A stretch of DNA of 63,308 nt, the filler included, from Olpidium bornovanus S191 (lineage: Eukaryota; Fungi; Olpidiomycota): NCBI GenBank assembly GCA_017911155.1. It is 28 parts of 28 records of this genome, joined end to end, with 100 filler letters (N's around TTAATTAATTAA, not from the genome) between each part and the next. Parts side by side here need not be neighbours in the genome. Positions count along the whole stretch, not along the records: positions 17,763 to 18,998 come from JAEFCI010000666.1; 27 more parts are not named here. One strand, written 5' to 3'. The number at the start of each line of letters is the position of its first letter. Within the stretch, counting starts at the first letter, position 1. Below the pieces are notes generated by a model. That model saw only the letters and a program-made list of their open reading frames with translations. It was not told the DNA's origin and searched no databases. Positions 17,934-18,998 of this stretch are shown piece after piece. The position numbers were made by a program, and so were the translations under genes.

Positions 17934-18998
17934 ATGCCGGAGCCTCTTGTCCCTTCAGTGGCCAATCGCCCGCCTCTCCCTGACGATGCTTCGTCGTTCC
18001 TCGCTTCACGTTCGCACACTACTGATTGGAAGCTGCACCCCGCTTGGTTCGCAGCTTTGGATGCCCGTTGGGGTCCACATACTATCGATCTTTTCGCGTC
18101 TGCCCGTAACCGCCAGCTTCCCCGGTGTGCCTTGCTCGAGCCGGAGGCCGGCACCGTCGCTACAGACGCCTTCTCTCTCATCTGGTCGGTCGAAAACGGA
18201 TGGGCCAACCCTCCTTTCGAGTCCGCCACGTTCTGGCGCATCCTGAACAAGGTCGAGTCTGATGACCCAAGGATCACGCTCCTGATTCCCGTCTGGACGA
18301 CGGCAGACTGGTTTCCCGACGTCACGGCCCATGCTATTGACCACCCCGTCGCCTTGCCGCGGGATTTCGATTTGTTTCTACCTGGATACACAGACAATCG
18401 TGTTGCTGTCGGGAGCCCTCGTTGGCCGGTACTTGCGGTCCGAAGTGCCGCGCGAGGGACGTTGCCGCCCGGACGAGTGTCCCCGCTTCGGATCCCACCA
18501 AAGTTTCACCCCGCGGACGCCGATCTAGTCACCATCGGTTACGCTCTCGAGCACGAGGACCCCTCCTCTCTTTCCCCGCGTTTGCGTCGGCAACTTGCGC
18601 GTTTTCTCCTTGTAGGCGGCCTGCTACACAAGCGCGCGCCGGACTGGCCGCGCCGCGTGCTCCTCGGATGCGACGATCGCAAGAAAGAAGCTATTCTCGA
18701 AGAACTCCATGACCGACAGCGACACTACGCCAACGAGACGTCCCTTATCCGTGTTCGTGCTCGCTACTTCTGGCCGGGCGTCGAAGAGGACGTCCGAAAT
18801 TACGTTCGTACTTGTGATGTATGTCAGCGACGAGGGGAAAAACGTGCCGAAGAACTACCCGCCAAACCACAACCTCTCCCGGACTTCTTTGAGGTATGGC
18901 ATCTCGACAGCAGCGGCACGCTGCCCTCTTCTGCAGGCTATCACTACTTCCAACTCGCTGTGGAACGCCTCTCGGGCTGGGTCGTCGCCCGTCGCATG
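17934..18998 (+). mobile_element. Retroelement pol fragment: DIRS-type N6-adenine methyltransferase-like domain fused in frame to a Ty3/gypsy-type integrase (HHCC + start of DDE core), truncated by contig end
   Basis: One frame with no stops. MT part: DWKLHP..F..LDARWGPHTIDLFAS.RNRQLP (D at 18024; DLFAS at 18087), DAFSLIW...GWANPPF (NPPF 18207-18218), ITLLIPVWTTADW. Integrase part: GLLHKR..RVL, ILEELHDRQRH (18708, 18723), RYFWPGVEEDVRNYVRTCDVCQR (C 18813, 18822), FEVWHLD (18906)..GYHYFQLAVERLSGW. Confidence 0.88.

What the first reader, a model, noticed from the sequence alone, without database searches (positions are those of the whole stretch)
17934..18998. Candidate new retroelement architecture: DIRS-type adenine methyltransferase fused to a gypsy-type DDE integrase
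Seen: a single stop-free frame of 355 codons. Residues ~31-170 carry DWKL, DLFAS, DAF..W, an intact NPPF catalytic-type motif and PxW..W. These are followed by the gypsy pre-integrase segment, an HHCC zinc finger and the first catalytic Asp of the rve core (WHLD). Established: this Dam-like MT domain is characteristic of DIRS1-like elements, where it follows RNase H and integration uses a tyrosine recombinase, not a DDE integrase. Several early-diverging fungi carry ApT 6mA linked to expressed genes. Inference: either a gypsy element captured the MT in its RNase H-integrase linker (LASR just before DWKL may be a relic of the ADxLSR RNase H end), or a DIRS-like pol swapped its recombinase for an integrase. 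Such an element could write 6mA on its own cDNA or target site. I do not recall this combination being described.
Basis: partly seen in the sequence, partly recalled or inferred. Interest (0 to 1): 0.88.

Follow-up and report, generated by a model that had tools for sequence, protein, structure and literature searches.

The report
Fungal gypsy retrotransposon carrying adenine methyltransferase
The piece is a fragment of the pol gene of a Ty3/gypsy-type retrotransposon, most likely from the zoosporic fungus Olpidium, that carries a DIRS-type Dam-like adenine methyltransferase domain between RNase H and the integrase; the fusion is real and conserved, but this architecture ("DAM-LTR") was already described in a May 2026 preprint, which does not mention fungi.

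Summary
In the 355-codon frame 17934-18998, Pfam finds Dam (PF05869) at residues 31-132 and the integrase HHCC finger (PF17921) at 248-300. The first catalytic Asp of the integrase core follows.

The fusion is not an artefact.
- A 6.4 kb contig from an independent 2012 run spans the whole piece at about 95% identity.
- A soil-metagenome contig crosses the junction.
- Two Olpidium bornovanus contigs carry the same layout, one at 97% and one at 68% nucleotide identity.

Between the two diverged families the methyltransferase is under purifying selection (pN/pS 0.26, integrase 0.20). The linker in front of it evolves neutrally.

The RNase H and integrase resemble ordinary gypsy elements, not DIRS-like ones. 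So a gypsy element captured the methyltransferase.

The ATG at 17934 is not a start. The frame continues upstream after a +1 shift in a C8 run at 17908-17915.

The novelty claim fails. bioRxiv 10.64898/2026.05.21.726589 describes "DAM-LTRs" in green algae, ochrophytes, ichthyosporeans, Pyropia and Euglena. Its text never mentions fungi, so this is a new, probably first fungal, member.

Whether the capture was independent is unresolved. Activity is untested. The closest solved fold is the RNA cap methyltransferase PCIF1.

The parts
17765..17907 (+). Upstream continuation of the pol frame (frame 3 of the piece): the linker that follows RNase H. It is open to the 5' edge of the piece.
   Evidence: the segment around VKDKVLLPLSDDVVSGLRPP aligns to the RNase H-to-methyltransferase linker of L002 (score 43; 0 of 300 shuffles reach it); frame 3 has no stop from 17768 to 17983.
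17908..17915 (+). C8 homopolymer where this copy shifts from frame 3 to the main frame (+1 relative to the deep consensus copy).
   Evidence: table 4: the X1 contig (depth 97) has one base left out at 17908. The soil contig of X4 keeps the window's length; frame 1 PPDGSVVPM follows on the L002 alignment directly after frame 3 LRPP.
17934..18998 (+). It is cut by the 3' edge of the piece.
18018..18443 (+). DIRS-type Dam-like / PCIF1-like N6-adenine methyltransferase domain (ORF residues ~29-170).
   Evidence: PF05869. E ~1e-31 to RT-RH-MT proteins. AlphaFold2 pLDDT 90; class I methyltransferase fold, closest to PCIF1/CAPAM (Z 11.2), T4 Dam (Z 9.3) and phage N6-adenine methyltransferases (E 1e-8); pN/pS 0.26 against L002.
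18087..18089 (+). Asp52 of the DLFAS motif, an invariant column of the family. By position it is a likely cofactor-binding residue (inferred).
   Evidence: D37 of the alignment's first sequence is invariant in 67 sequences; it aligns with the CFASPLN segment of PCIF1.
18207..18218 (+). NPPF catalytic-type motif (motif IV of N6-adenine methyltransferases), intact.
   Evidence: AAC CCT CCT TTC. P78 and P79 invariant, N77 near-invariant; aligns with ANPPF of PCIF1.
18444..18674 (+). Methyltransferase-to-integrase linker and pre-integrase segment (residues 171-247).
   Evidence: spanned by the X1 contig (whole piece) and by the X3 soil contig 18344-18708. L001 covers it from 18416 at 97% and L002 covers it at 68% nt identity; pN/pS 0.44.
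18675..18833 (+). Integrase HHCC zinc-binding domain (H259, H264, C294, C297).
   Evidence: PF17921, E 4.7e-15; the four residues are invariant in the three Olpidium-type copies.
18834..18998 (+). Start of the DDE integrase core, with the first catalytic Asp (D325 of WHLD, 18906-18908). The rest is cut off by the edge of the piece.
   Evidence: alignment to the PFV integrase through residue 349; copies P0001, P0151 and L002 continue into a full rve core (PF00665).

Best explanation
The piece is an internal pol fragment of a non-chromoviral Ty3/gypsy-type LTR retrotransposon of an Olpidium-like fungus. A roughly 145-residue DIRS-type Dam-like (PF05869, PCIF1-like fold) N6-adenine methyltransferase domain sits in frame between RNase H and the HHCC/DDE integrase. 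That makes it a 'DAM-LTR' element.

Shown:
- The domain order is RNase H, linker, methyltransferase, linker, integrase.
- The junction is conserved in independent data sets and in two families that differ by about 32% at the nucleotide level.
- Selection has kept the methyltransferase coding sequence about as tightly as the integrase.
- The RNase H and integrase backbone is gypsy-like, not DIRS-like.
- This particular copy carries a frameshift in a C8 run and is decaying neutrally.

Inferred:
- A gypsy ancestor captured the methyltransferase, perhaps together with the last residues of the donor's RNase H, from a DIRS-like element.
- The domain is released from, or acts within, the Pol polyprotein in the virus-like particle or pre-integration complex.
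- It methylates adenine on the element's own nucleic acid (cDNA or the RNA:DNA hybrid). After DDE integration, the new copy would then enter the host's AMT1-maintained 6mA state, which is permissive for transcription. This is the model proposed for DAM-LTRs in the 2026 preprint.
For: Domains: PF05869 above cut-off, PF17921; PFV and Ty3 integrase; E ~1e-31 to RT-RH-MT proteins.

Origin and copies:
- the best hits are three Olpidium bornovanus MAG proteins (91% and 70% identity).
- L001 (97% nt) continues into a complete integrase. L002 (68% nt) has RNase H ending in ADALSR, then a ~75-residue linker, the methyltransferase and the integrase. This stretch lies in one frame apart from one stop and one frameshift.
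- a 6434-nt contig of an independent run spans the whole piece with 58 substitutions and 1 gap. A soil-metagenome contig crosses the junction.

Selection: window against L002 gives pN/pS of 0.26 for the methyltransferase, 0.20 for the integrase, 0.44 for the MT-IN linker and 1.33 for the pre-MT linker. Window against L001 gives 0.86.

Backbone:
- the L002 RNase H hits only integrase-bearing proteins, the best being a gypsy element without a methyltransferase (E 6e-25). It hits none of the DIRS-like proteins.
- the integrase matches gypsy integrases without a methyltransferase at E 1e-26 to 1e-30. It is separated (93/97 support) from the chromoviral DAM-LTR integrases.

Fold and motifs.

Architecture seen elsewhere: (P0035, P0041, P0067, P0081, P0145, P0179 have PR-RT-RH-Dam-IN with or without a chromodomain). 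Literature.
Against: - No RT, gag, protease or LTR of this family could be retrieved. The Olpidium contigs are short, L001 holds no LTR pair, and the JGI metagenome scan found nothing. 'LTR retrotransposon' therefore rests on RNase H and integrase similarity alone.
- The Pfam Dam score only just passes its cut-off (28.7 against 28.1 bits).
- The organism is inferred from 91-97% identical Olpidium bornovanus MAG contigs. It is not given.
- The mechanism is untested. The preprint's heterologous expression of DIRS and DAM-LTR domains produced no 6mA in E. coli.
- Iyer et al. 2016 judged DIRS1 methyltransferase domains to be probably inactive PCIF1 derivatives.
- The closest solved fold is an RNA methyltransferase, not a DNA one.
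- No RNA run holding the element was found.
Confidence: 0.85

Rival explanations
1. The domain is not a DNA 6mA writer. It would be a PCIF1-like RNA adenosine methyltransferase acting on the element's own (capped) transcript or genomic RNA, or a non-catalytic module that binds RNA or RNA polymerase II. This is a rival on the mechanism only; the identity of the element stays the same.
For: - The closest solved structure is the cap-specific adenosine methyltransferase CAPAM/PCIF1: Foldseek E 1.2e-5, TMq 0.67; VIA-align Z 11.2 over 145 residues, against 9.3 for T4 Dam.
- Giant-virus PCIF1 homologues are among the viral fold matches.
- A profile of 67 domains has PCIF1 as its top PDB sequence hit, with FAS..LN and ANPPF aligned, though the hit is not significant (E 0.28).
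- Iyer et al. 2016 place the DIRS1 methyltransferase in the PCIF1 clade.
- The preprint saw no 6mA in E. coli.
Against: - Pfam assigns the domain to the phage/bacterial DNA Dam family.
- The best viral fold matches are phage DNA N6-adenine methyltransferases (E 1e-8).
- The preprint reports more 6mA on DAM-LTR copies than on other LTR elements in three species.
- No member of PF05869 appears to be solved, so PCIF1 may simply be the nearest available structure.
- Full conservation of NPPF and purifying selection argue against a dead domain.
Confidence: 0.2
2. A DIRS-like pol replaced its tyrosine recombinase with a DDE integrase. In that case the backbone would be DIRS and the integrase would be the acquired part.
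For: The methyltransferase and the LSR-like residues just before it are DIRS-type. In DIRS elements the methyltransferase also follows RNase H.
Against: - The RNase H next to the methyltransferase in L002 has its own complete ADALSR end about 75 residues upstream.
- That RNase H matches only gypsy-type, integrase-bearing proteins and none of the ~120 DIRS-like RT-RH-MT proteins.
- The pre-integrase segment, the HHCC finger and the GPY/F-like C-terminus are gypsy-type.
Confidence: 0.05
3. The fusion is a misassembly, or a single nested insertion that happens to be in frame.
For: The source is a fragmented assembly of short contigs, and this copy is itself frameshifted upstream.
Against: - The junction is present in an independent 6.4 kb contig at depth ~97 and in a soil-metagenome contig.
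- It is present in L001 at 97% identity and in the 68%-identical family L002.
- The methyltransferase and the MT-IN linker are under purifying selection between the two families.
Confidence: 0.02

Closest known systems
DAM-LTR retrotransposons (Fernandez-Moreno et al., bioRxiv 10.64898/2026.05.21.726589, May 2026)
   Same: They are Ty3/gypsy-type LTR elements whose pol carries the eukaryotic, DIRS-derived Dam domain with an intact N-P-P-aromatic pocket. One described type has the domain between RT and integrase, and the ichthyosporean type lacks a chromodomain. Proteins with PR-RT-RH-Dam-IN turned up in my own search.
   Different: - The preprint's lineages are Chlorophyta, Chloro-Ochrophyta, Ichthyosporea, Pyropia and Euglena. 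Its text never mentions fungi or Olpidium.
- The Olpidium pair forms its own methyltransferase clade (support 99) with no supported sister.
- Its integrase lies outside the chromoviral DAM-LTR integrase clade.
- Its Pfam Dam score is borderline and the annotated copy P0002 has no Dam hit at all. The preprint's 1e-5 hmmsearch screen could therefore have missed it.
DIRS1-like tyrosine-recombinase retrotransposons (methyltransferase domain after RNase H)
   Same: The methyltransferase domain is of this type: 35-47% identity over ~145 residues to many RT-RH-MT proteins. It also sits in the same position, directly after RNase H.
   Different: - Here a DDE integrase with an HHCC finger follows in the same frame, where DIRS elements end the ORF shortly after the domain and use a tyrosine recombinase.
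- The RNase H is not DIRS-like.
PCIF1 / CAPAM cap-specific adenosine N6-methyltransferase
   Same: It is the best solved structural match (Z 11.2, rmsd 3.4 over 145 residues). It shares the FAS..LN and ANPPF motifs. Iyer et al. 2016 group DIRS1 methyltransferases with PCIF1.
   Different: - There is no WW domain and no helical domain.
- Sequence similarity is not significant (E 0.28).
- PCIF1 acts on capped mRNA; the substrate here is unknown.
Retrotransposons that captured cytosine methyltransferases (Gypsy-DNMT3, SymbioLINE-DNMT; de Mendoza et al. 2018, PMC5890265)
   Same: The principle is the same: an LTR or other retroelement pol gains a DNA-modification enzyme domain.
   Different: The enzyme class (C5-cytosine against N6-adenine), the host lineages and the presumed effect on chromatin all differ. 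I saw only its title and abstract, and the preprint's citation of it.

Membership tests
DAM-LTR retrotransposons (2026 preprint) | Carries the eukaryotic DIRS-type Dam domain (PF05869) with a conserved N-P-P-aromatic pocket | tested here: met
   28.7 bits against a cut-off of 28.1. E ~1e-31 to DIRS-like methyltransferase domains; all invariant and near-invariant columns are kept, and NPPF is intact.
DAM-LTR retrotransposons (2026 preprint) | The Dam domain lies in the same ORF as Ty3/gypsy pol domains, including a DDE integrase | tested here: met
   the HHCC finger is in the same frame; copy L002/P0002 shows RNase H, methyltransferase and integrase, and P0001/P0151 show the full rve core.
DAM-LTR retrotransposons (2026 preprint) | The RT falls within Ty3/gypsy in an RT phylogeny | not testable with these tools
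   No RT of this family could be fetched. The 6.4 kb X1 contig that should hold it cannot be read out. RNase H similarity serves as a proxy only.
DAM-LTR retrotransposons (2026 preprint) | Long terminal repeats flank the element | tested here: inconclusive
   there is no repeat pair in the 4.1 kb L001, which holds only the 3' side. A purine-rich tract follows the pol stop.
DIRS order (tyrosine-recombinase retrotransposons) | Uses a tyrosine recombinase and has no DDE integrase | tested here: not met
   an HHCC finger plus an rve integrase follow the methyltransferase in frame.
DIRS order (tyrosine-recombinase retrotransposons) | DIRS-type RT/RNase H | tested here: not met
   the L002 RNase H gives no hit (E<0.01) to any of the ~120 RT-RH-MT proteins, and gives E 6e-25 to a gypsy-type pol.
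Chromoviruses (Ty3/gypsy with a C-terminal chromodomain) | Chromodomain after the integrase | tested here: not met
   P0151, which runs to the pol stop, has only PF17921 and PF00665; its C-terminus is GPY/F-like and then stops.
Retroviral-type DDE integrase (rve, PF00665) | HHCC finger and the D,D(35)E triad | tested here: inconclusive
   The window holds HHCC and the first D only, because it is cut at 18998. L002 and P0001 hold the second D and the E, but copy L001 reads N at the second position.
Class I SAM-dependent N6-adenine methyltransferases | Rossmann-like methyltransferase fold with motif IV (N/D)PP(F/Y/W) | tested here: met
   pLDDT 90. PCIF1 Z 11.2, T4 Dam 9.3, EcoDam 8.8; phage Dam E 1e-8.
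Class I SAM-dependent N6-adenine methyltransferases | Methyl transfer to adenine in DNA | not testable with these tools
   This needs biochemistry. The preprint's E. coli assay of related domains was negative.

The most novel reading that the evidence does not exclude
The Olpidium elements are an independent, fungus-specific capture of the DIRS methyltransferase by a non-chromoviral gypsy element. That would make them the first DAM-LTR lineage in Fungi. In addition, the domain works like its closest structural relative PCIF1: it methylates adenosine in the element's own RNA or RNA:DNA replication intermediate rather than in duplex DNA. This would explain why such domains give no 6mA in E. coli.
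Probability: 0.15. Interest if true: 0.75.

Novelty: new member of a known kind. Interest (0 to 1): 0.4.

Why it matters
The preprint argues that DAM-LTRs arise mainly in hosts that keep AMT1-dependent 6mA on active genes. Early-diverging fungi are a classic 6mA-rich group, yet no fungal DAM-LTR is mentioned there.

A family in Olpidium, the zoosporic lineage closest to terrestrial fungi, would:
- extend the host range of this element type to a new kingdom;
- add an independent test of the AMT1 association;
- offer two diverged families for dating the capture and for biochemical work.

The structural link to PCIF1 also sharpens an open question: do these retroelement methyltransferases act on DNA at all?

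Tried and rejected
- **Word-indexed protein searches**. They returned few hits and almost no organism names, so the donors of the nearest DIRS-type methyltransferases stay unidentified.
- **JGI metagenome scan** with the three-copy alignment. 102 pattern matches, none confirmed.
- **Full-length copy.** The Olpidium contigs are 1.7-4.1 kb. The 6.4 kb X1 contig is visible only as an alignment. L001 has no LTR pair.
- **Independence of the capture.** The 136-sequence methyltransferase tree is a near-star.
  - AU test: holding Olpidium together with P0067 is not rejected (p 0.89). The constrained tree even beat the quick free search.
  - Olpidium already sits with P0081/P0111/P0076 at a weak support of 68.
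  - Two further tests did not finish.
  - So neither an independent nor a shared origin is shown.
- **RNase H tail at the 5' edge.** A resemblance I saw by eye in frame 2 ('FAR..SLARR') is no better than shuffles and is dropped.
- **Expression.** No RNA run holding the stretch was listed. This does not show that the element is silent.

Full report
**What is in the sequence.**
The piece 17763-18998 is about 60% G+C. It holds one long frame, 17934-18998, that runs off the 3' edge.
- Pfam places PF05869 Dam at ORF residues 31-132 (E 1.2e-6, 28.7 bits, just above the 28.1 cut-off). It places PF17921 Integrase_H2C2 at 248-300 (E 4.7e-15).
- Residues 246-349 align to the prototype foamy virus integrase and to Ty3 pol. 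This covers the first catalytic Asp, in WHLD at 18906-18908.
- An exhaustive HMMER search of 1.84 billion cluster representatives gave 9997 hits at E<=0.001. Most of the 150 best cover residues ~27-172. They lie near the C-terminal end of 600-750-residue proteins with an RT-RNase H-methyltransferase layout, which is the DIRS-like arrangement.
- In an alignment of 67 such domains, the window keeps every invariant or near-invariant column. These include D52 of DLFAS and NPPF at 18207-18218.

**The frame does not start at the ATG.**
Upstream, frame 3 of the piece (17765-17907) is open to the 5' edge. It aligns with the linker that follows RNase H in a related copy (score 43; none of 300 shuffles reach it). 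The next residues of that alignment continue in the main frame. The switch lies in a run of eight C at 17908-17915.

In the deep contig of an independent sequencing run that C run is one base shorter, so the reading is continuous. A soil-metagenome contig has the same length as the window. The window copy is therefore a frameshifted member of a family whose consensus reads straight through.

**Where it comes from, and whether the junction is real.**
The two best database hits (91% and 70% identity) are partial proteins of the Olpidium bornovanus metagenome-assembled genome GCA_017911155.1. I fetched two of its contigs, one of them through a cluster-mate of the best hit.
- L001 is 97% identical from 18416 onward. 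It continues into a full integrase core and a GPY/F-like C-terminus, then a stop with no chromodomain.
- L002 is only 68% identical in DNA and 66% in protein. It shows an RNase H ending in ADALSR, then a ~75-residue linker, the methyltransferase and the integrase. These lie in one frame, broken by one stop and one frameshift.

Laying public runs on the piece gave two further supports:
- a 6434-nt contig (depth ~97) covers all of it with 58 substitutions and one gap;

A misassembly or a one-off nested insertion is therefore excluded.

**The domain is maintained by selection.**
Nei-Gojobori counts:

| Comparison | Segment | pN/pS |
|---|---|---|
| window vs L002 | methyltransferase | 0.26 (dN 0.21, dS saturated near 2) |
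| window vs L002 | integrase part | 0.20 |
| window vs L002 | MT-integrase linker | 0.44 |
| window vs L002 | stretch before the methyltransferase | 1.33 |
| window vs L001 (same family) | overlapping part | 0.86 |

The within-family value is what one expects for copies that decay neutrally after insertion. The methyltransferase has thus been a working part of the element since before the two families split.

**Who captured what.**
- The RNase H of L002 finds only integrase-bearing, gypsy-type proteins among the sequences at hand. The best is a pol without a methyltransferase (E 6e-25). It finds none of the ~120 DIRS-like RT-RH-MT proteins.
- The integrase matches gypsy integrases without a methyltransferase at E 1e-26 to 1e-30. 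That is better than its match to any other methyltransferase-bearing pol.
- In a small integrase tree it is separated, with 93/97 support, from the chromoviral methyltransferase-bearing group.
- DIRS-like relatives carry A-D-x-L-S-R a few residues before DWKL. The window's LASR at that place may be a relic of the donor's RNase H end, but only the L lines up without a one-residue shift, and this stretch evolves neutrally.

Together this favours capture of a DIRS segment by a gypsy element. It does not favour a DIRS element that swapped its recombinase.

**Fold.**
AlphaFold2 with the 67-sequence alignment gives a confident model (pLDDT 90, pTM 0.83). It is a class I methyltransferase fold.
- The best solved match is the cap-specific adenosine methyltransferase PCIF1/CAPAM: Foldseek E 1.2e-5, TMq 0.67; VIA-align Z 11.2, rmsd 3.4 over 145 residues.
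- T4 Dam (Z 9.3) and E. coli Dam (Z 8.8) follow, among many RNA methyltransferases near Z 8-9.
- Among predicted viral structures the best are phage DNA N-6-adenine methyltransferases (E 1.4e-8), followed by giant-virus PCIF1 homologues.
- A profile of the domain has PCIF1 as its top PDB sequence hit, with FAS..LN and ANPPF aligned, but the hit is not significant (E 0.28).

**What is already known.**
- A bioRxiv preprint of 22 May 2026 (10.64898/2026.05.21.726589) reports that Dam domains, previously known only in DIRS elements, occur in Ty3/gypsy LTR retrotransposons, which it names DAM-LTRs.
- It infers at least four or five independent transfers from DIRS. The lineages are Chlorophyta chromovirus-like, Chloro-Ochrophyta with the domain between RT and integrase, Ichthyosporea without a chromodomain, Pyropia, and Euglena.
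- It links DAM-LTRs to hosts that encode AMT1 and to raised 6mA and expression of the copies.
- It proposes that the domain marks reverse-transcription intermediates so that AMT1 then maintains 6mA.
- Its E. coli expression assays gave no 6mA.
- Earlier, Iyer et al. (PMC4738411) placed the DIRS1 domain in the PCIF1 clade and thought it inactive.

My own search also found it in several unrelated metagenomic and genomic proteins (P0035, P0041, P0067, P0081, P0145, P0179).

**What may still be new.**
- The preprint's text contains no mention of fungi, chytrids or Olpidium.
- Its screen used Pfam Dam at E 1e-5 on EukProt genomes. The Olpidium domain barely passes the Pfam cut-off, and the annotated copy P0002 does not hit Dam at all, so it could have been missed.
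- In my methyltransferase tree the two Olpidium families form their own clade (support 99) without a supported sister.
- The tree is too poorly resolved to show an independent capture. AU tests do not reject a union with P0067, and a weak grouping (68) with P0081/P0111 appears.

I therefore file it as a new, probably first fungal, member of a known kind.

**Mechanism.**
- Shown: domain order, conservation, an intact catalytic-type motif and a methyltransferase fold.
- Inferred: the domain acts within or after cleavage from Pol on the element's own nucleic acid, and the DDE integrase inserts the product.
- Open: whether the substrate is duplex DNA, the RNA:DNA hybrid or RNA. The PCIF1 resemblance and the negative E. 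coli assays keep an RNA or hybrid substrate alive (about 0.2).

**Limits.**
- No RT, gag, protease or LTR of this family was obtained.
- The organism is inferred from near-identical Olpidium contigs.
- No expression data were found.
- Figure panels and supplementary tables of the preprint were not available. A fungal entry there cannot be ruled out.

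Noticed in passing
L001:3300-4122: In frame 3, at the far end of the Olpidium contig that carries the 97% copy, about 2 kb beyond the pol stop, lies a gag-like ORF. 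It has a CCHC knuckle (CFYCKQLGH) and runs off the contig. It could be the gag of a neighbouring or tandem element. No LTR pair was found between it and the pol stop.
   Followed up: partly
L001:1378-1530: Directly after the pol stop comes a T-rich tract, then a purine run (GGGGAGGGGGA) near 1503-1513. This might be the polypurine tract in front of the 3' LTR.
   Followed up: no
L001, second catalytic position of the integrase core: Copy L001 reads N where L002 and P0001 have the second catalytic Asp (VANRGGEF against VTDRGGEF and VADRGGEF). This particular copy therefore probably encodes an inactive integrase.
   Followed up: no
P0068 (1941 aa, library protein): A pol-like protein with RT, RNase H, HHCC and rve, and the Dam domain only at the extreme C-terminus (1794-1906). 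The order is the reverse of the window's. It may be a different architecture, or a gene model that joins nested elements.
   Followed up: no
runs X2-X4 and X5 (soil and other metagenomes, two studies): Short contigs 95-99% identical to parts of the piece occur in soil metagenomes. The element, and presumably its fungal host, is therefore detectable in environmental DNA.
   Followed up: partly
P0002 gene model on L002:25-1938: The NCBI gene model for the 68% copy splices around the stop and the frameshift. In doing so it removes part of the methyltransferase (residues corresponding to ~25-72 and ~103-118 of the window ORF), which is why its precomputed Pfam list lacks Dam.
   Followed up: yes
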